Below, one piece after another: positions 1-6,015 of a stretch of DNA of 6,015 nt; the stretch's first letter is position 1; every line of letters starts with the position of its first letter. The position numbers were made by a program, and so were the translations under genes. Under the pieces are notes generated by a model that saw only the letters and a list, made by a program, of their open reading frames with translations, was not told the origin of the DNA and did not search any database. Location of the stretch: positions 1 through 6,015 of IMG/VR virus record IMGVR_UViG_3300023192_000822; one strand, 5' to 3'.

Positions 1-555
1 AGAGTTCCCAAATATACTAGGAGCATTCTGCATCAGGTATGCTTTCTGGTCAATGATTTCACGTAGATATGTTAGGTTACCTGGACTTGGGAAAGGGTCA
101 TGAAGTAAAGAACATCCACAAACCCATACAGGATCAGTTACTTGTAGGTCTTTTATTTCTTCCCTAGGAATAATACTAGCTACATTCCTCATAGGTCTAG
201 TATTATTTAATTGTACCGCAGCTATATCATGATGCTTATCATAAGCAATAATTTGTGCGGTAGTGGAGTTAGCTGATACTACTTTGCTTCTATCGTAATC
301 AAAGACTTCAATACGAACTTCTTCTAGTACATCAGTCTTTACATCTTTCTTAAGAATGTTGTCCCATTGTTCAGATACTTTAATAGCCCCATCAATGACA
401 TGTTGACAGGTAAGTGCAATATTAATAAAGCTTCCTGCTTTATCCGGGTCTTCTTTACTATATACTAATACACCGCTTCCACCAGCTTGTCCAGCCAAAA
501 CTTTAGTTACCGGATACAAAACCTTTTCATGAATTTCTACTTGTGATAAACTCAT
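1..555 (-). CDS. Trypsin-like (S1/HtrA-type) serine protease, 3' end runs off the window
   Basis: Hand translation from ATG 555 (not in ORF track): MSLSQVEIHEKVLYPVTKVLAGQAGGSGVLVY...IALTCQHVIDG...YDKHHDIAAVQLN...VWVCG...MQNAPSIFGNS. It has the GSG motif, His motif (LTCQHV), Asp motif (DIAAV) and Ser motif (GNS, cut at base 1). SD AGGAGG at 563-568. Open for 185 codons. Confidence 0.9.
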   Translation of the reverse strand, partial: MSLSQVEIHEKVLYPVTKVLAGQAGGSGVLVYSKEDPDKAGSFINIALTCQHVIDGAIKVSEQWDNILKKDVKTDVLEEVRIEVFDYDRSKVVSANSTTAQIIAYDKHHDIAAVQLNNTRPMRNVASIIPREEIKDLQVTDPVWVCGCSLLHDPFPSPGNLTYLREIIDQKAYLMQNAPSIFGNS

Positions 556-1259: not shown

Positions 1260-1487
1260 TTAATTCATATTAAAGCGTTGCACAACTACTTCATAAGGTA
1301 AAGTATTTACCACCGTGGGGCCGTGTTCCAATTCTAATTGTCTCCATACTAGCTGTAATAAAACCTGATTAAATATGGGGCCAATCTTTTCCGTCACTAT
1401 AGTATAGGCTTGCATAGGGTCATTAGGAAAAAATGGTCTAACGGCTTCTAATATATCTTTATATTTTTCTTCGTTATTATTAATCAT
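1260..1487 (-). CDS. Hypothetical protein, 75 aa
   Basis: ORF track. TAATG coupling with the upstream peptidase gene; ends immediately before the hairpin cluster. Confidence 0.7.
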   Translation of the reverse strand: MINNNEEKYKDILEAVRPFFPNDPMQAYTIVTEKIGPIFNQVLLQLVWRQLELEHGPTVVNTLPYEVVVQRFNMN

Positions 1488-1954
1488 TAAAGTATAATTA
1501 AACCATCCTTACAAGTATATAGACCTGTTCCTATTCTACTAGTCACAAACTTGTCTGATTGCGGTTCAAATAATTCTGCTGTGCCATCGGCAAAGATGAC
1601 ACAATTATAAGCGTGTCCACCCGAATAGTCAATGACCAAGCCCACATTGTTTAAGTGAAATTTCCTATCCATCCTAGCTTTAAAGCTAAAGGCAAAATTA
1701 TCACAGTCATACTTTTCTGCTACGTACTTCTTCTTATCCGTCCAATCCCAATTAATAATAGCTTCAAAATCTAATCTACCACATGCCCAATACTTAGAAT
1801 CTAAGTGTTTACGTTTCATTCCCGCATTAATTATTTGCTTAGTTATTAAAGCATTATAAATAGTATTAGCACTTAGTTCAGTATAACCTTCTGCTAAAAT
1901 AGGTGGGGTTAATTTATTGGACAACTCTATAAGTTTATTGGCTATGACTCCCAT
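1487..1954 (-). CDS. Papain/transglutaminase-like cysteine peptidase, MOA lectin C-terminal (Agglutinin_C)-like family
   Basis: Motifs YxxEKYDCDNFA (Cys), GHAYN (His) and FEPQ (Glu) match the Cys-His-Glu triad layout of the Marasmius oreades agglutinin C-terminal protease domain and its prokaryotic/phage homologs. Confidence 0.8.
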   Translation of the reverse strand: MGVIANKLIELSNKLTPPILAEGYTELSANTIYNALITKQIINAGMKRKHLDSKYWACGRLDFEAIINWDWTDKKKYVAEKYDCDNFAFSFKARMDRKFHLNNVGLVIDYSGGHAYNCVIFADGTAELFEPQSDKFVTSRIGTGLYTCKDGLIIL

Positions 1955-2142
1955 TTTTTAATAACCTCTTCTAAGTCATCTAATGCTTTCATAGCATCAT
2001 TTTGGTCTTTCTCTAAATCATCAATCTTAGACTTTAGAATTACAATTTCATTGACCGTAGCAGAATAATCTACTTGGGTAGTTTCCATCTTAAGAAAAAT
2101 AGTTTTAAGCCGTGTAATTAAATCTAGCAAGCGTTCAAGCAT
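1942..2142 (-). CDS. Coiled-coil hypothetical protein, 66 aa (MLERLLDL...)
   Basis: The ORF track starts at 2184. ATG 2142 is preferred because it overlaps the end of the Cys-rich gene and is preceded by purine-rich AAGGATGGGA. Strong heptad periodicity. Confidence 0.65.
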   Translation of the reverse strand: MLERLLDLITRLKTIFLKMETTQVDYSATVNEIVILKSKIDDLEKDQNDAMKALDDLEEVIKKWES

Positions 2143-2329
2143 GTTTATTCCCATCCTTACAACTACAGTTGCCTCCACAAGCACAAACTAAAGACATATC
2201 AGCAGCCCACAGATCAACTAACTCCTTATCACAATCACAATCTTCACATTTACAAGTGCAATCCTCTTCACATTCACAGGTACCCTTTAAAGCATAGGCA
2301 TTAATGCCACAATAACATTCAGTAACCAT
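2135..2329 (-). CDS. Metallothionein-like Cys-rich peptide, 64 aa
   Basis: 13 Cys of 64 residues, mostly in CxC motifs (CYC, CEC, CTCKC, CDC, CACGGNCSC). SD AGGAGA upstream. Confidence 0.65.
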   Translation of the reverse strand: MVTECYCGINAYALKGTCECEEDCTCKCEDCDCDKELVDLWAADMSLVCACGGNCSCKDGNKHA

Positions 2330-2344
2330 TTAAATATCTCCTAC

Positions 2345-2479
2345 TTATGACCTAAATTTTCCCCCAGTAGTAATAGTCTTACCTTGTTTATGACATGGGC
2401 CACACATTGTTCCCGCTTTAGTAGTCTTAGCGTGTTGTTTTCTATTACAACCAGGACATCTTACCCAACTCTTTTTCAT
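2345..2479 (-). CDS. 44-aa basic zinc-ribbon peptide (CPGC...CGPC)
   Basis: Hand-read MKKSWVRCPGCNRKQHAKTTKAGTMCGPCHKQGKTITTGGKFRS. ATGA overlap with the upstream gene; fills the gap exactly. Not in ORF track. Confidence 0.7.
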   Translation of the reverse strand: MKKSWVRCPGCNRKQHAKTTKAGTMCGPCHKQGKTITTGGKFRS

Positions 2480-2631
2480 TTATCAGACTCCAAAATTTTC
2501 ATTCCCAATGCCCCTAATAAAGTAATACACCCCGTAGTAATTTCAATATGCCCTAAATCCAGAGACAATATCGCTATAGCTCCTAACATTAGAATGCTTA
2601 TCAAAATTTGGGGGCGTAAGTATTTCATCAT
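2476..2631 (-). CDS. 51-aa two-helix membrane protein, holin-like topology
   Basis: Hand-read MMKYLRPQILISILMLGAIAILSLDLGHIEITTGCITLLGALGMKILESDK. SD AGGAGA overlaps the upstream TAG. Two hydrophobic segments with charged termini. Not in ORF track. Confidence 0.7.
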   Translation of the reverse strand: MMKYLRPQILISILMLGAIAILSLDLGHIEITTGCITLLGALGMKILESDK

Positions 2632-2869: not shown

Positions 2870-2897
2870 ATTATACACCGATTTAGAAGAAAGTCAA
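2870..2897 (-). promoter_or_regulatory. Sigma70-type promoter TTGACT-16 nt-TATAAT with AT-rich upstream tract
   Basis: -35 at 2892-2897, consensus -10 at 2870-2875, and an AT-rich possible UP element at 2900-2929. It has the same ACTTGACT -35 context as the 1149-1177 promoter. Confidence 0.7.
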
Positions 2898-2929: not shown

Positions 2930-4429
2930 TTATAGATAGAACTCATTATCACGAAACCATTTGGAAAAAGATTTACGTATTGGAAAAGATACATCTATTT
3001 CCGTAGAGTACCAAGGATGCATATTTGTTTGAAGGTCTTTGTGTGCCTTAGCAGCTAACGAAGTATCGTAAGTAGGGGCATCAGCATCTAATTTCGTTCC
3101 CAGATGTGAGCCAGCTTCATTCACTACCCAAGGGGGTTTCATATGAATAGGGATACCGAAATCATCTGTCTCAGTTTCTATGACAGGGGTATACCTCATG
3201 GCTTCCTGTGGCTGTTCCGAAGGAAATCCATACTCCCGTAGTAATTGGTGATGTTCTGCTTGCCTTCCCCCAGTATTTAATAGGGTAGCAAAGGTAGCAG
3301 CCATATCTTTTGACGATGAAGGTTTACCTTGTTTCTCTACCCATGACAAGAAAGACCCAGTAAAATCAATTGACCCATCTGCTTTTTCCATTAACATAGT
3401 AAATTCCCTTCCTTCATCAATAGTTGGAGATTCATCCAGTGGCGCAAAAACTTTACAGTACATGTGGTCTTCAATCATGCCTTCAATTATATCACAGGTT
3501 TGTTCCTGCTTATTAAAGAACTTACAGGTACCACACATAATACCATTTTGCATTTCCACATCAGTAGCATTTCGATAGCCTGCGTCTGGCTGAGTAATTT
3601 TACCTTCTTCTTTCTGAAGAAAGCAACTACCATTACATTCCTGTTTCTCCATCAGACAGCTACCATCAATACAAGTAGACACAGCATCATGAGCTTTCAA
3701 TATATCAAAGACAGCACTTTGATTTACACCCTTTTCACAAACTGTAACTTCTGCAAGTTCCATTTCATCTACTTGCATATAGGGTTGTAAACCTTTCTGC
3801 ATATTTTGAGTTTTGGTTGCGCTTCCCGCAATAGAATAACTCTTTAGCTTACCCTCATTAACTTGATCCATAACCCGCTGTGCAATTTTTGTATCGTCCC
3901 TCAATTCCGTAATGAAGAAAAGTCCATTCTCACCTACACCAGATTTAAAAATCTGCCCACCTTTAGAAATATAGGCGGGTAATGCCCAACCAACTTGAAC
4001 ATCAGAGTGTAGTACCATTGTATTTCTAGTACGAAAATTCCCCATATACTTCTTGAAAGCTTTTTCTAGGGCTTGTGTAGTAATTAAATGGCCCTCTCTA
4101 TCAATTAATTCTACAGATGCGGGGCCACCTAAGATCATAGGCTCTCCCTCACTAAGTTTAGAGACAGCTTTAGAATAAGTTAGGTCATCTGGATACGCCC
4201 TAGCTAGAGTTATAGTTTCTGCCTTAGATGCTATTCCCGCTTTAAGCAAACGTTTATATTCATCAAGGGCATCAGAAATATCTTCTAAAGAAACCTTACC
4301 ACCATCTTGCTTTTCAATGGGCAGTATGGTAGCATCAATACCAACTGTTTGATACATCTCATTATTAGCAGCCCAGTTAGAGGGACTTGGAATATTTCCT
4401 ACTACAGTTTTAATAGCAGAGATTGTCAT
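2930..4429 (-). CDS. Multidomain HK97/XkdF-type prohead (capsid maturation) serine protease fused to Cys repeats, a HiPIP-like domain and an unknown C-terminal domain
   Basis: aa ~98-246: GGPASVELIDREGHLIT, MVLH141SDVQVG, GKLKSYS199IAG, ELAE227VTVCEKGVNQSAVFDILK are typical prohead protease motifs. aa 277-328: C299-x2-C302-x9-C312-x12-C325. Confidence 0.85.
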   Translation of the reverse strand: MTISAIKTVVGNIPSPSNWAANNEMYQTVGIDATILPIEKQDGGKVSLEDISDALDEYKRLLKAGIASKAETITLARAYPDDLTYSKAVSKLSEGEPMILGGPASVELIDREGHLITTQALEKAFKKYMGNFRTRNTMVLHSDVQVGWALPAYISKGGQIFKSGVGENGLFFITELRDDTKIAQRVMDQVNEGKLKSYSIAGSATKTQNMQKGLQPYMQVDEMELAEVTVCEKGVNQSAVFDILKAHDAVSTCIDGSCLMEKQECNGSCFLQKEEGKITQPDAGYRNATDVEMQNGIMCGTCKFFNKQEQTCDIIEGMIEDHMYCKVFAPLDESPTIDEGREFTMLMEKADGSIDFTGSFLSWVEKQGKPSSSKDMAATFATLLNTGGRQAEHHQLLREYGFPSEQPQEAMRYTPVIETETDDFGIPIHMKPPWVVNEAGSHLGTKLDADAPTYDTSLAAKAHKDLQTNMHPWYSTEIDVSFPIRKSFSKWFRDNEFYL

Positions 4430-5352
4430 TAACTATGGACTCCCCAGATGACCCCGCTAACCGTAGGAGTTCCAGACGCAGATACTACTGAGACATTATC
4501 CCTAAAGTCTACGGGGAAATTAGATTCATATGTTGCTCCCGCTAATACAGGTATTCCCGTACTAGAAGACGCAATTACATCAAAAGCTACATACACAATT
4601 TCAGCACTGGTACCTGATTCATTCTTAATCTGTATGCCACGAATAACCGACATGGCAGGACGCTTTCTAGAAGTAGAAGCATTGGCAGTTCCTGACCATT
4701 CGTAATTCAAGCCAGACGCTCCATCAACATAAGTAGACACAGCATTAGTATCTTCCCGTACTTCAAACATAATCTTATCAGTATACCAGTCAATGTTATG
4801 GTTAGCAGCACTAACAACATAAACTCTATACGCTGCTGCTGCGGTACTCCCTACTACTGAATAAGAAGCCGTAATACGTGCAAAGCTAGTAGTTAAGTTA
4901 GTATCGGCAGAGGTAGCCAATTCAGTTCCCGAAGCATCAGTAATCTGTATCTTAACACTTCCTGACGCAGAGGCTCCCCGAACTTCACATTGAGCCGTTA
5001 TGTGTTGAGGATTTACTGTAAAACCAATATTAGGAGACACCCAATAAAAACCCTCACCAGCAGCCGAATTCCCTGGATTGGTGAGGAGGGACGCTGTACC
5101 AACAGACTGTTGGGCAGTACTTCTAGATATAGCTGACCCAGTAGCCGTAAACATTGTAATATCAGCAGCCTCTATTCTAGGGTTCGTAACCCAGTTAACT
5201 GCAATCTCACCCCTATCAATTGCTAATAGGTTTGCCGCTGTCGTAGAGGTTGCCGTTCTAAAGGGGGAATATTTTGTGTACGGATGAACGGATTGACGAG
5301 TAGATGAATCTACTTCCCAGCCCCGTGCATCATTATGTCGTTCATTAGCCAT
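4429..5352 (-). CDS. Virion structural/decoration protein with a carbohydrate-binding-like (CBM4/9-type) beta-sandwich
   Basis: Ala/Ser/Thr/Val-rich. NWVTNPRIE...YVDG...WSGTANASTS resembles the CBM-like modules of phage tail/structural proteins. Lies downstream of the capsid gene; SD AGGAG. Confidence 0.65.
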   Translation of the reverse strand: MANERHNDARGWEVDSSTRQSVHPYTKYSPFRTATSTTAANLLAIDRGEIAVNWVTNPRIEAADITMFTATGSAISRSTAQQSVGTASLLTNPGNSAAGEGFYWVSPNIGFTVNPQHITAQCEVRGASASGSVKIQITDASGTELATSADTNLTTSFARITASYSVVGSTAAAAYRVYVVSAANHNIDWYTDKIMFEVREDTNAVSTYVDGASGLNYEWSGTANASTSRKRPAMSVIRGIQIKNESGTSAEIVYVAFDVIASSSTGIPVLAGATYESNFPVDFRDNVSVVSASGTPTVSGVIWGVHS

Positions 5353-5379: not shown

Positions 5380-5667
5380 TTATTTAGAATACCAATTTAA
5401 AATGCCAACTACCGCAGCTAGGACAACTCCCGCATGGGCAAACATTACAAATACCATCATAGTTAGAGTTTTAGCACCGTAAAATTTAGTACGCCAATGT
5501 TTTAATTCATCTAAATCATAATTAATTCTTGCTAACCCTGCTACTAAAGTTCTATTCAATTCTGTGGAAGTATCTATATAAGTATCTAAACGTTCCATAT
5601 AAACTGCAACTTTGACTTCTAGCTCATCGTCATCCAACGGTTTCATCCGATTTTTCATCTGAGTCAT
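5380..5667 (-). CDS. Coiled-coil protein with C-terminal membrane anchor (XhlA/holin-like architecture)
   Basis: ORF track. Amphipathic N-terminal helix (VAVYMERLD...) followed by a ~25-aa hydrophobic tail. Exact start Met uncertain. Confidence 0.65.
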   Translation of the reverse strand: MTQMKNRMKPLDDDELEVKVAVYMERLDTYIDTSTELNRTLVAGLARINYDLDELKHWRTKFYGAKTLTMMVFVMFAHAGVVLAAVVGILNWYSK

Positions 5668-5803
5668 GTTGCACTTTCCTCAATACGATAATAGGATTGT
5701 TCGTTCCAAACTTAGGGAGAGGAGATTTTCTATAGTGATCTATAGGATTTCCGTTATCATCATAACGGATTAAAGTAGGATACTTAGGACGATTTATTCT
5801 CAT
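5630..5803 (-). CDS. Hypothetical 57-aa protein (MRINRPKYPTLIRYDDNGNPI...)
   Basis: Hand-read. SD GGAGGG directly upstream; fills the gap after the capsid hairpin. Below the track cutoff. Confidence 0.55.
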   Translation of the reverse strand: MRINRPKYPTLIRYDDNGNPIDHYRKSPLPKFGTNNPIIVLRKVQHDSDEKSDETVG

Positions 5804-5823
5804 CTTCCCTCCGTATAGATAGA

Positions 5824-5847
5824 GGGGGTGGGTATTATCCCACCCCC
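5824..5847 (-). terminator. GC-rich hairpin after the capsid gene (terminator/mRNA stabiliser)
   Basis: GGGGGTGGG-TATTAT-CCCACCCCC, a 9-bp stem 10 nt past the stop. Only a weak U tract (TCTATCTAT) follows on the minus strand. Confidence 0.55.
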
Positions 5848-5857
5848 CCAGGAAAAT

Positions 5858-6015
5858 TTAGGAAGCGTTCAAATCTCCAATCTTAGCCTGTACCCAGAGA
5901 TTCTTGCACCGCATTTCGCCCATGGTATAGAGCAGACCCCTCACTACCAAAGCATTGGCAGCGAAGTAGTCACGGTTCTCAACATACTGAGTAGGTTGAG
6001 CAACTGCAATTTCTA
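5858..6015 (-). CDS. Probable major capsid protein (HK97 fold), C-terminal 51 aa
   Basis: EIAVAQPTQYVENRDYFAANALVVRGLLYTMGEMRCKNLWVQAKIGDLNAS*. The PTQY..E, YTMGE.RC and Q.KI.DL pattern recalls capsid C-termini of halovirus/marine archaeal-virus-like tailed viruses. A hairpin follows, as is typical for capsid genes. Confidence 0.7.
   Translation of the reverse strand, partial: EIAVAQPTQYVENRDYFAANALVVRGLLYTMGEMRCKNLWVQAKIGDLNAS

What the first reader, a model, noticed from the sequence alone, without database searches (positions are those of the whole stretch)
2135..2329. Virus-encoded metallothionein-like peptide with eukaryote-style CxC clusters
Seen: 13 Cys in three clusters separated by Cys-free spacers, very acidic, ending CACGGNCSC. 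Known: plant/fungal metallothioneins use CxCGxxCxC units with Cys-free linkers, whereas bacterial SmtA/BmtA has a different Cys/His pattern. Inference: a viral metal buffer or chaperone (Zn/Cu/Fe).
Basis: partly seen in the sequence, partly recalled or inferred. Interest (0 to 1): 0.65.

Follow-up and report, generated by a model that had tools for sequence, protein, structure and literature searches.

The report
Phage-encoded metallothionein-like cysteine-cluster peptide
A clade of uncultured marine phages carries a conserved 64-residue, very acidic peptide with 12 invariant cysteines in CxC motifs that looks like a metallothionein but belongs to no known metallothionein family; its metal binding and role are untested.

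Summary
Window 2135-2329 (- strand) encodes a 64-aa peptide with 13 Cys (20%) in three clusters (2+7+4), pI 4.2, with a good Shine-Dalgarno site. Chance is excluded: P about 1e-7 from base composition, about 19 distinct homologues, 12 Cys invariant among the ten close members, and dN/dS of 0.09-0.35.

The window is a whole IMG/VR viral contig from a marine tailed virus, with an S78 prohead protease and the tail of a SU10-like capsid gene. The gene lies in a small-gene operon behind a near-consensus sigma-70 promoter that is invariant in seven relatives. This suggests a bacterial host and a unit separate from the head genes.

An exhaustive HMM search of 1.84 billion representatives found only 10 relatives, all 44-96 aa. 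Every member whose contig was examined occupies the same slot of related marine viral contigs, except one on a 698-nt scaffold. There are none in 185,579 prokaryote species.

No known metallothionein family is matched above threshold (best Pfam Metallothio_PEC, 12 bits against a cut-off of 31.8; BmtA type absent). The resemblance is in motifs, composition and language-model features only.

Best reading: a new, phage-restricted, metallothionein-like metal-thiolate cluster protein with a 9-Cys core and an optional CxCxxxCxC module. The metal-buffer role is plausible but unproven. A zinc-scaffolded binding module is the main rival.

The parts
2135..2329 (-). Cys-rich ORF: 64 aa plus TGA stop, 13 Cys, pI 4.2
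   Evidence: Homologues. Under purifying selection, dN/dS 0.09-0.35.
2231..2329 (-). N-terminal core domain, residues 1-33: E-C-[YF]-C-x-x-N-A-Y-x-L-K-G-x-C-E-C-E-E-x-C-x-C-x-C-x-x-C-x-C. It has 9 Cys and is the part present in every family member.
   Evidence: Alignments A2 and A3. Members P0010, P0011 and P0013 consist of this part only.
2186..2230 (-). Cys-free acidic spacer, residues 34-48, with a conserved D-[LM]-W-x-x-D motif. Its length varies between relatives.
2159..2185 (-). C-terminal four-Cys module C-x-C-G-G-N-C-x-C, residues 49-57. Across the family it is absent, single, or present as three CxCxxCxC-type motifs.
   Evidence: P0014 has three such motifs.
2338..2342 (-). Shine-Dalgarno AGGAG, 8 nt before the ATG
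   Evidence: Sequence; upstream strings
2870..2897 (-). Sigma-70-type promoter TTGACT-16 nt-TATAAT (11 of 12 matches). It heads the small-gene operon that contains the Cys-rich gene.
   Evidence: The same pattern lies in the same slot just after the protease stop in nearly all related loci. The -35 and -10 elements are invariant in a 7-sequence alignment whose flanks vary.
2476..2631 (-). 51-aa hydrophobic small protein (its RPQI...EITTGC...GALGMKILESD motif is shared). It is the conserved upstream operon partner.
   Evidence: homologous to the 48-aa genes of L001, L013 and L014
2345..2479 (-). 44-aa basic zinc-ribbon ORF (CPGC...CGPC). It is specific to this strain and is not part of the conserved unit.
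   Evidence: Weak DZR_2 hit. No counterpart in L001, L013 or L014. A DNA contig of run X1 joins 2320 to 2478 without it (tables 5 and 5c).
1942..2142 (-). Downstream 66-aa coiled-coil ORF. Its ATG overlaps the Cys-rich gene's stop (ATGCTTGA).
   Evidence: Not homologous to the downstream gene of L001.
2930..4429 (-). 499-aa prohead serine protease (S78) fusion. It is the last head gene before the promoter.

Best explanation
The ORF is a real, selected gene of a clade of uncultured marine tailed phages. It encodes a small cytoplasmic metal-thiolate cluster protein: a new, phage-restricted, metallothionein-like family.

Inferred mechanism. The reduced thiolates of the 12 invariant Cys wrap soft metal ions, and the peptide folds only around them. 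The 9-Cys core (CxC-x10-CxC-x3-CxCxC-x2-CxC) has the Cys count and much of the spacing of a mammalian beta-domain M(II)3Cys9 cluster. The CxCGGNCxC module adds a fourth site or enlarges the cluster. The expected load is about 4 Zn/Cd, or 6-8 Cu(I).

Inferred role. The gene is transcribed from a strong host-type sigma-70 promoter together with other small non-structural genes. It would act during infection as a metal sink or buffer, either holding Zn for phage zinc proteins or sequestering Cu/Cd.

Shown: the gene is real, conserved, Cys-invariant, modular, phage-restricted and separately promoted. Inferred: metal binding, stoichiometry, metal identity and physiological role.
For: Real gene: 13 Cys far above chance. 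Twelve Cys are invariant in 10 close homologues, and 6 remain invariant across all 19 members with 2 more at 90% or above. dN/dS is 0.09-0.35 at saturated dS. There is a Shine-Dalgarno site. Contigs from three metatranscriptome studies cover 2154-2455.

MT-like chemistry: 20% Cys, six CxC motifs, no N-terminal hydrophobic stretch. AF2 gives pLDDT 43 with no secondary structure, and the ESM Atlas model pLDDT 0.39, as expected of a fold that needs metal. Every named language-model neighbour is a metallothionein family, scores 0.76-0.84. The only Pfam families hit by several members are Metallothio_PEC (6 of 19) and Metallothio_5 (7 of 19), all below threshold.

Modularity typical of metallothioneins: the C-terminal CxCxxxCxC module occurs 0, 1 or 3 times among relatives.

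Non-structural unit: a conserved sigma-70 promoter lies between the protease gene and the operon.

No RiPP or redox maturation enzyme was found in 10-14 kb flanks.
Against: No significant similarity to any metallothionein family or solved structure. The language-model scores are under 0.9 and largely reflect Cys composition.

Conserved aromatic and hydrophobic residues (Y/F6, Y12, L14, W41) and the invariant NAYxLKG, ECEE and DLW motifs are not needed for a plain metal sponge.

Cys flanked mostly by Asp/Glu, rather than Lys/Ser/Gly, is unusual for classical metallothioneins.

A low-confidence AF2 model is weak evidence. Contigs in RNA libraries do not exclude DNA carry-over. There are no metal-homeostasis genes nearby.
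Confidence: 0.45

Rival explanations
1. Zinc-scaffolded interaction module. The Cys clusters bind a few structural Zn ions (for example a Zn3Cys9 cluster as in CXC or pre-SET domains, plus a Cys4 site). Their only job is to hold a very small, very acidic protein in shape. The protein's function is to bind and inhibit or redirect a host protein, or to mimic nucleic acid, as an early host-takeover or anti-defence factor.
For: Non-Cys residues are invariant or nearly so (N10, A11, Y12, L14, K15, G16, E19, E21, E22, D39, W41, D44). Net charge is -8 and pI 4.2. The gene lies in a flexible operon of small genes of unknown function behind a strong host-type promoter, typical of early phage genes. The family is restricted to one phage clade with no cellular homologue.
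Against: No match to the tesmin/CXC, pre-SET or any zinc-finger family. The number of C-terminal Cys modules varies from 0 to 3, which is odd for a fixed interface. No partner is identified, and the downstream neighbour is not conserved.
Confidence: 0.3
2. Virion-associated small acidic protein, such as an internal head protein or a decoration or assembly factor. It is encoded next to the head module, and the Cys residues give metal or disulfide cross-links in the particle.
For: The gene lies about 600 nt downstream of the capsid/protease module in all relatives. The protease fusion itself carries Cys-rich inserts.
Against: A conserved near-consensus sigma-70 promoter separates it from the head genes. 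Its operon partners are small membrane-like and unknown proteins. In L013 it sits next to an OB-fold protein and ThyX, i.e. nucleotide metabolism. It has no PHROG structural family.
Confidence: 0.08
3. Precursor of a modified or disulfide-rich peptide, such as a RiPP, bacteriocin-like or knottin-like toxin, rather than a metal binder.
For: It is a short Cys-rich peptide. One family member gives a very weak hit (E 0.062) to a CLI_3235 bacteriocin precursor model.
Against: No signal peptide or leader/double-glycine architecture is conserved. No radical-SAM, lanthionine synthetase, YcaO or export genes occur in 10-14 kb of flanks in several relatives. Dense CxC spacing with acidic neighbours is not a known RiPP core.
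Confidence: 0.05
4. Spurious ORF: a compositional accident or the shadow of another feature.
For: No database annotation. The ORF is short.
Against: Chance probability is about 1e-7. There are 19 homologues with invariant Cys, and dN/dS is well below 1. The gene has a Shine-Dalgarno site, conserved synteny and coverage in RNA libraries.
Confidence: 0.01

Closest known systems
Plant type 4 (Ec/PEC) metallothioneins, Pfam PF02068
   Same: Small and Cys-rich, with CxC and CxCxxxCxC units separated by Cys-free stretches. This is the best, though insignificant, Pfam alignment, spanning residues 4-58. The nearest named language-model cluster scores 0.84.
   Different: The score is 12 bits against a cut-off of 31.8. 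The family has no conserved His, which Ec proteins use as ligands (established knowledge). It is strongly acidic, phage-encoded and behind bacterial expression signals. Homology is not shown.
Mammalian metallothionein beta-domain (M(II)3Cys9 cluster)
   Same: Nine Cys beginning at residues 5 and 7, with CxC pairs spaced x3 and x2. This compares the window core with the MT2 beta-domain pattern CxC-x5-CxC-x3-CxC-x2-CxC-x2-C, recalled from established knowledge. The vertebrate MT cluster appears among language-model neighbours at 0.78.
   Different: No Pfam PF00131 match. The first spacer is longer and conserved, with Tyr and Leu. The residues between Cys are acidic rather than Lys/Ser.
Fungal and mycobacterial Cu(I) metallothioneins (Cup1, Neurospora CuMT, MymT)
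   Same: Short peptides dominated by CxC motifs, with about 7-12 Cys and no His requirement. An unnamed 47-aa cluster recorded as Eukaryota (commonest Basidiomycota, phylum known for 1 member) is among the three top language-model neighbours.
   Different: No sequence match. Metal preference is unknown.
Bacterial BmtA/SmtA metallothioneins, Pfam PF02069
   Same: Prokaryote-world small metal-binding protein. This is the type reported when viral AMG surveys list 'metallothioneins' (for example PMC13317609).
   Different: No hit in any of 19 members even at E up to 10. There are no conserved His ligands and no zinc-finger-like fold elements predicted.
Zn3Cys9 CXC domains (tesmin/TSO1 CRC, MSL2 CXC, pre-SET)
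   Same: Nine-Cys domains built from CxC pairs that form a metallothionein-like trinuclear zinc cluster for a structural purpose (established knowledge).
   Different: No Pfam match. Those domains are basic and bind DNA or precede SET domains, whereas this one is acidic and free-standing.
Phytochelatins and synthetic (Glu-Cys)n peptides
   Same: Alternating acidic residue and Cys (ECxC, CECEE, CEDCDC) resembles gene-encoded (Glu-Cys)n metal binders. This is recalled from the literature, not tested here.
   Different: Those are enzymatically made gamma-peptides or artificial constructs. This is a natural ribosomal peptide with conserved spacers.

Membership tests
Metallothionein (operational class) | Low molecular mass (under about 10 kDa) | tested here: met
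   64 aa. Relatives are 44-96 aa.
Metallothionein (operational class) | High Cys content (about 15-35%) arranged in CxC, CxxC or CC motifs | tested here: met
   13 of 64 residues = 20%, with six CxC and one CxxC. Twelve Cys are invariant in close homologues.
Metallothionein (operational class) | Few or no aromatic residues and His | tested here: inconclusive
   Y/F6, Y12 and W41 are conserved, and the single His is not. The classical criterion is not met, but plant and bacterial metallothioneins also break it (established knowledge).
Metallothionein (operational class) | High metal content in metal-thiolate clusters, with the fold dependent on metal | not testable with these tools
   Only indirect evidence: AF2 pLDDT 43 with no secondary structure, and the ESM Atlas model pLDDT 0.39.
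Pfam PF02068 Metallothio_PEC (plant type 4) | Score at or above the gathering threshold of 31.8 bits | tested here: not met
   12 bits, E 0.27 for the window protein. Six of 19 members match, best E 0.043.
Pfam PF02067 Metallothio_5 | Score at or above 25 bits | tested here: not met
   10.1 bits, E 0.93. Seven of 19 members match, none better than E 0.93.
Bacterial BmtA/SmtA (PF02069) and plant type 1-3 (PF01439) metallothioneins | Any profile match; for BmtA, conserved Cys/His ligand set | tested here: not met
   Neither family is listed for any of 19 members at E up to 10. No conserved His.
RiPP precursor peptide | Cognate maturation enzyme (radical SAM, LanM/LanBC, YcaO, etc.) encoded nearby | tested here: not met
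   Pfam labels of all called genes in up to 14 kb of six or more related contigs show none. Many neighbours are unannotated, so absence is not absolute.
Tesmin/TSO1-type CXC (Zn3Cys9) domain | Profile match to PF03638 or its CxCx4Cx3YCxCx6Cx3CxCx2C pattern | tested here: not met
   No Pfam hit. The spacing differs. Only the count of nine Cys is shared.
Tailed phage (Caudoviricetes) gene | Located on a contig with hallmark head genes | tested here: met
   S78 prohead protease. The MCP C-terminus is 98% identical to the SU10-like MCP of L008. The window is an IMG/VR UViG.

The most novel reading that the evidence does not exclude
A phage-borne metallothionein family that arose independently. It would be the first experimentally tractable virus-encoded metal-thiolate cluster protein, used by marine phages to re-route scarce or toxic trace metals (Zn, Cd, Cu) in the infected cell. 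It would add trace-metal buffering to the list of viral auxiliary functions in the ocean, and give a naturally acidic (Glu/Asp-Cys)n-type ribosomal metal binder of new sequence design.
Probability: 0.35. Interest if true: 0.7.

Novelty: new variant of a known kind. Interest (0 to 1): 0.5.

Why it matters
Metallothioneins are polyphyletic. Each independent invention shows how few sequence rules are needed to build a metal-thiolate cluster. A family confined to one clade of marine phages, with no cellular homologue in 1.84 billion protein representatives or 185,579 prokaryote species, would be such an invention, and would be the first clear candidate in a virus.

If it handles metals, phages manipulate trace-metal economy in infected marine cells, where Zn, Cd, Co and Cu are limiting or toxic at picomolar to nanomolar levels. 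If instead it is a zinc-scaffolded inhibitor, it is a new minimal fold for host takeover. Either way the peptide is short, synthesisable and easy to test.

Tried and rejected
**Searches for similar sequences or structures**
- Megablast of the whole window against 50,697 phage records: no match.
- tblastn of the peptide against the same records: no match at E up to 1.
- PHROGs: no family for the peptide.
- NCBIfam: nothing for the window protein.
- PDB sequence profile search: no hit at E up to 10.

**Structure**
- AF2 with a 10-sequence alignment gave pLDDT 43 with no secondary structure. Fold searches would be meaningless, so none were run.
- The ESM Atlas structure neighbours all have TM under 0.45 and are unrelated.

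**Cellular homologues and host**
- The scan of 185,579 prokaryote species gave only a 15-residue Cys-rich match in a Myxococcales MAG, taken as spurious.
- No whole genome is held for the window.
- The DNA_pol_B search of three related viral records was empty, but these records are 29-38% complete.
- Pfam on the extra 12 kb of G002 gave only DUF932 and DUF7178.
- Host signals were mixed. MCP and protease are nearest to haloarchaeal tailed viruses at about 30% identity over a third of their length. Mom is 51% identical to that of Methylophilales phage Melnitz, the exonuclease resembles those of bacterial phages, and the sigma-70 promoters and Shine-Dalgarno sites are conserved. I reject an archaeal host as the leading idea, but it is not excluded.

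**Other**
- Literature searches found no characterised phage metallothionein, only AMG lists that mention metallothioneins.
- The metagenome-contig scan was not spent, because the exhaustive HMM search already bounded the family.

Full report
**1. Observation**

The minus strand of window 2135-2329 carries an ATG-started ORF of 64 codons. The peptide has 13 Cys at residues 5,7 / 18,20,24,26,28,31,33 / 49,51,55,57. These form three clusters separated by Cys-free spacers of 10 and 15 residues. It has 13 Asp+Glu against 5 Lys, no Arg and one His, and its pI is 4.19. The last cluster reads CACGGNCSC and is followed by a short tail.

AGGAG lies 8 nt before the ATG, and similar Shine-Dalgarno sites precede most other genes of the window.

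From the base composition of the coding strand, 2.1 Cys codons are expected in 64 codons, and the probability of 13 or more is 1.5e-7. Using the 1.6% Cys content of the other window genes, it is 2e-11. Among 375 six-frame ORFs of 50 aa or more in the window and related loci, only this family exceeds 12% Cys.

**2. Is it a gene?**

- A word-based search of 5.8 billion proteins found five homologues of 61-65 aa.
- IMG/VR gave five more loci and showed that the window is the whole contig IMGVR_UViG_3300023192_000822.
- An exhaustive profile search of 1.84 billion representatives found only 10 clusters at E up to 1e-3, all 44-96 aa.
- In the ten closest sequences, 12 of the 13 Cys are invariant. 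So are E4, N10, A11, Y12, L14, G16, E19, E21, E22, W41, D44 and G52-G53-N54.
- Pairwise dN/dS is 0.09-0.35, with synonymous sites near saturation.
- Contigs from three independent metatranscriptome studies lie on 2154-2455, one with 2 differences in 149 nt. This suggests transcription, but DNA carry-over in those libraries is not excluded.

The gene is real and under purifying selection.

**3. Anatomy of the family**

Across all 19 members, the constant part is the N-terminal core E-C-[YF]-C-x2-N-A-Y-x-L-K-G-x-C-E-C-E-E-x-C-x-C-x-C-x2-C-x-C, with nine Cys. An acidic spacer of variable length follows, containing D-[LM]-W-x-x-D. After it comes a four-Cys module, C-x-C-G-G-N-C-x-C.

That module is missing in P0010, P0011 and P0013. 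P0014 has three CxCxxCxC-type motifs after the core. A variable number of Cys modules around a fixed core is typical of how metallothioneins tune capacity (established knowledge).

**4. Context**

All genes of the window are on the minus strand. In the direction of transcription they are:

| Window position | Gene |
|---|---|
| 5861-6013 | Last 51 codons of a SU10-like major capsid protein, 98% identical to the full gene of L008 |
| 5380-5667 and 5630-5803 | Two small ORFs |
| 4429-5352 | 307-aa unknown protein |
| 2930-4429 | 499-aa S78 prohead protease fusion |
| 2476-2631 | 51-aa hydrophobic protein |
| 2345-2479 | 44-aa zinc-ribbon ORF |
| 2135-2329 | Cys-rich gene |
| 1942-2142 | 66-aa coiled-coil ORF whose ATG overlaps the stop of the Cys-rich gene |
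| 1487-1954 | Lectin_C_term-like protein |
| 1-555 | Trypsin-like protease |

The same order recurs in TARA and other marine contigs of up to 31 kb. Further downstream these also carry Mom, DUF932 and, in one relative, ThyX next to the Cys-rich gene.

Between the protease stop and the small genes lies TTGACT-16 nt-TATAAT, at 2897-2870 on the minus strand. The pattern occurs at the same slot in nearly all related loci. In an alignment of seven divergent relatives the -35 and -10 hexamers are invariant while the flanks vary.

The Cys-rich gene therefore belongs to a separately promoted small-gene operon read by a sigma-70-type polymerase, not to the head-gene unit. Its immediate neighbours are flexible. 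The zinc-ribbon ORF is absent in relatives and in a strain variant seen in run X1. The downstream ORF is not homologous to that of L001.

**5. Host**

No genome is held for the window, and the signals are mixed.

- *Archaeal hint:* the capsid and protease have haloarchaeal tailed viruses and a Methanofastidiosa virus as their nearest cultured relatives, at about 30% identity over a third of their length.
- *Bacterial signals:* Mom is 51% identical over 94% of its length to that of Methylophilales phage Melnitz. The exonuclease resembles those of bacterial phages. The conserved sigma-70 promoters and Shine-Dalgarno sites also point to a bacterial host.

I take the host to be an unidentified marine bacterium. 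Run metadata list seawater, marine sediment and hydrothermal vent metagenomes, with at least a small share of the window's words in runs from 16 studies.

**6. What is it?**

- Pfam gives only sub-threshold matches. Metallothio_PEC scores 12 bits against a 31.8 cut-off and is hit by 6 of 19 members (best E 0.043). Metallothio_5 is hit by 7 of 19 (best E 0.93). No other family recurs.
- The bacterial BmtA/SmtA model and the plant type 1-3 model are not hit at all.
- NCBIfam, PHROGs and the PDB give nothing.
- The protein language-model search places it nearest to unnamed 47-aa clusters. Among named clusters it lies only near metallothioneins (PEC 0.84, family 5 0.80, vertebrate 0.78, plant type 2 0.76). 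All are under the 0.9 level at which such scores mean more than a lead.
- AF2 and the Atlas model give no confident fold and no secondary structure. That is what one expects of a peptide that folds only around metal, but it is weak evidence.
- There is no N-terminal hydrophobic stretch, so the peptide stays in the reducing cytoplasm, where dense CxC thiols are metal ligands rather than disulfides (inference).
- No RiPP maturation genes lie nearby.

The peptide meets the sequence criteria of the operational metallothionein class (size, Cys content, CxC motifs). It fails every test of membership in a known metallothionein sequence family.

**7. Mechanism**

The mechanism I commit to is as follows.

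- The nine-Cys core has the Cys count and much of the spacing of a beta-domain M(II)3Cys9 cluster. This compares it with the mammalian pattern, recalled from established knowledge.
- The C-terminal CxCxxxCxC module adds a Cys4 site or enlarges the cluster.
- I expect about four Zn or Cd, or six to eight Cu(I), per chain.
- The gene is expressed from a strong host-type promoter alongside other non-structural small genes. The peptide would act as a metal sink or buffer in the infected cell.

I give this 0.45. Metal-thiolate binding as such I put at about 0.75.

The main rival (0.3) is that the metals are purely structural and the conserved NAYxLKG, ECEE and DLW surfaces of a very acidic mini-protein bind a host target. 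Virion association (0.08), a modified or disulfide peptide (0.05) and a spurious ORF (0.01) are less likely, for the reasons listed under the rivals.

**8. 'Eukaryote-style'**

The CxCGxNCxC unit does look like plant and fungal motifs. But there is no significant similarity, no conserved His as in Ec proteins, no cellular homologue at all, and the expression signals are bacterial. Convergence within a phage lineage is the economical explanation.

**9. Novelty and score**

Viral AMG surveys occasionally list 'metallothioneins' (PMC13317609). My searches found no characterised phage metallothionein and no description of this family.

It is best rated as a new variant of a known kind: an independent, phage-restricted, metallothionein-like family. 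Interest is moderate (0.5). The gene is certain, the chemistry is likely, the physiological role is open, and the decisive experiments are simple.

Noticed in passing
window 2870-2897 (-) and 1604-1632 (-); same slots in L001-L014: Two near-consensus sigma-70 promoters (TTGACT-16/17 nt-TATAAT, 11 of 12 matches). The first is invariant in seven divergent relatives and is preceded by a conserved AT-rich element ATAATATATAATATT. The second lies inside the Lectin_C_term-like gene and recurs in relatives.
   Followed up: partly
window 2345-2479 (-): A 44-aa basic zinc-ribbon ORF (CPGC...CGPC) sits between the conserved 51-aa membrane-like gene and the Cys-rich gene. It is present only in this strain. 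A DNA contig of run X1 joins 2320 to 2478 with 19 other letters in its place.
   Followed up: partly
window 2930-4429 (-); L008 4426-5766: The S78 protease fusion and the SU10-like capsid protein have haloarchaeal tailed viruses (HVTV-1, HCTV-1/5) and a Methanofastidiosa virus as nearest cultured relatives. Mom and the promoters look bacterial, so head-gene ancestry and host signals disagree. The protease fusion also carries its own Cys-rich insert, at about residues 250-340.
   Followed up: partly
L015 107-319 (protein P0011): On a 698-nt metagenome scaffold, the nine-Cys core is fused to a tail that matches the C-terminus of YebC/TACO1 (E about 1e-6). It is followed by a RuvC-like ORF, i.e. 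the bacterial yebC-ruvC arrangement. This is either an assembly chimera or a real fusion or insertion.
   Followed up: partly
window 5801-6000: The capsid-gene tail is by far the most covered part of the window in all three metatranscriptome runs (summed contig depth 15-237 against about 0-7 elsewhere). Many variant contigs end there. This fits a highly conserved and highly expressed capsid gene shared by many relatives.
   Followed up: no
window 1487-1954 (-) and 1-555 (-): A 155-aa protein with a Lectin_C_term/Agglutinin_C domain and a trypsin-like serine protease (274 aa in relatives) are conserved downstream in every related contig. Their function is unknown, and the pairing is unusual for a phage.
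   Followed up: no
window 2135-2142: The stop of the Cys-rich gene and the ATG of the next ORF overlap (ATGCTTGA), which suggests translational coupling in this strain. In L001 the two genes are 34 nt apart and the downstream gene is unrelated.
   Followed up: yes
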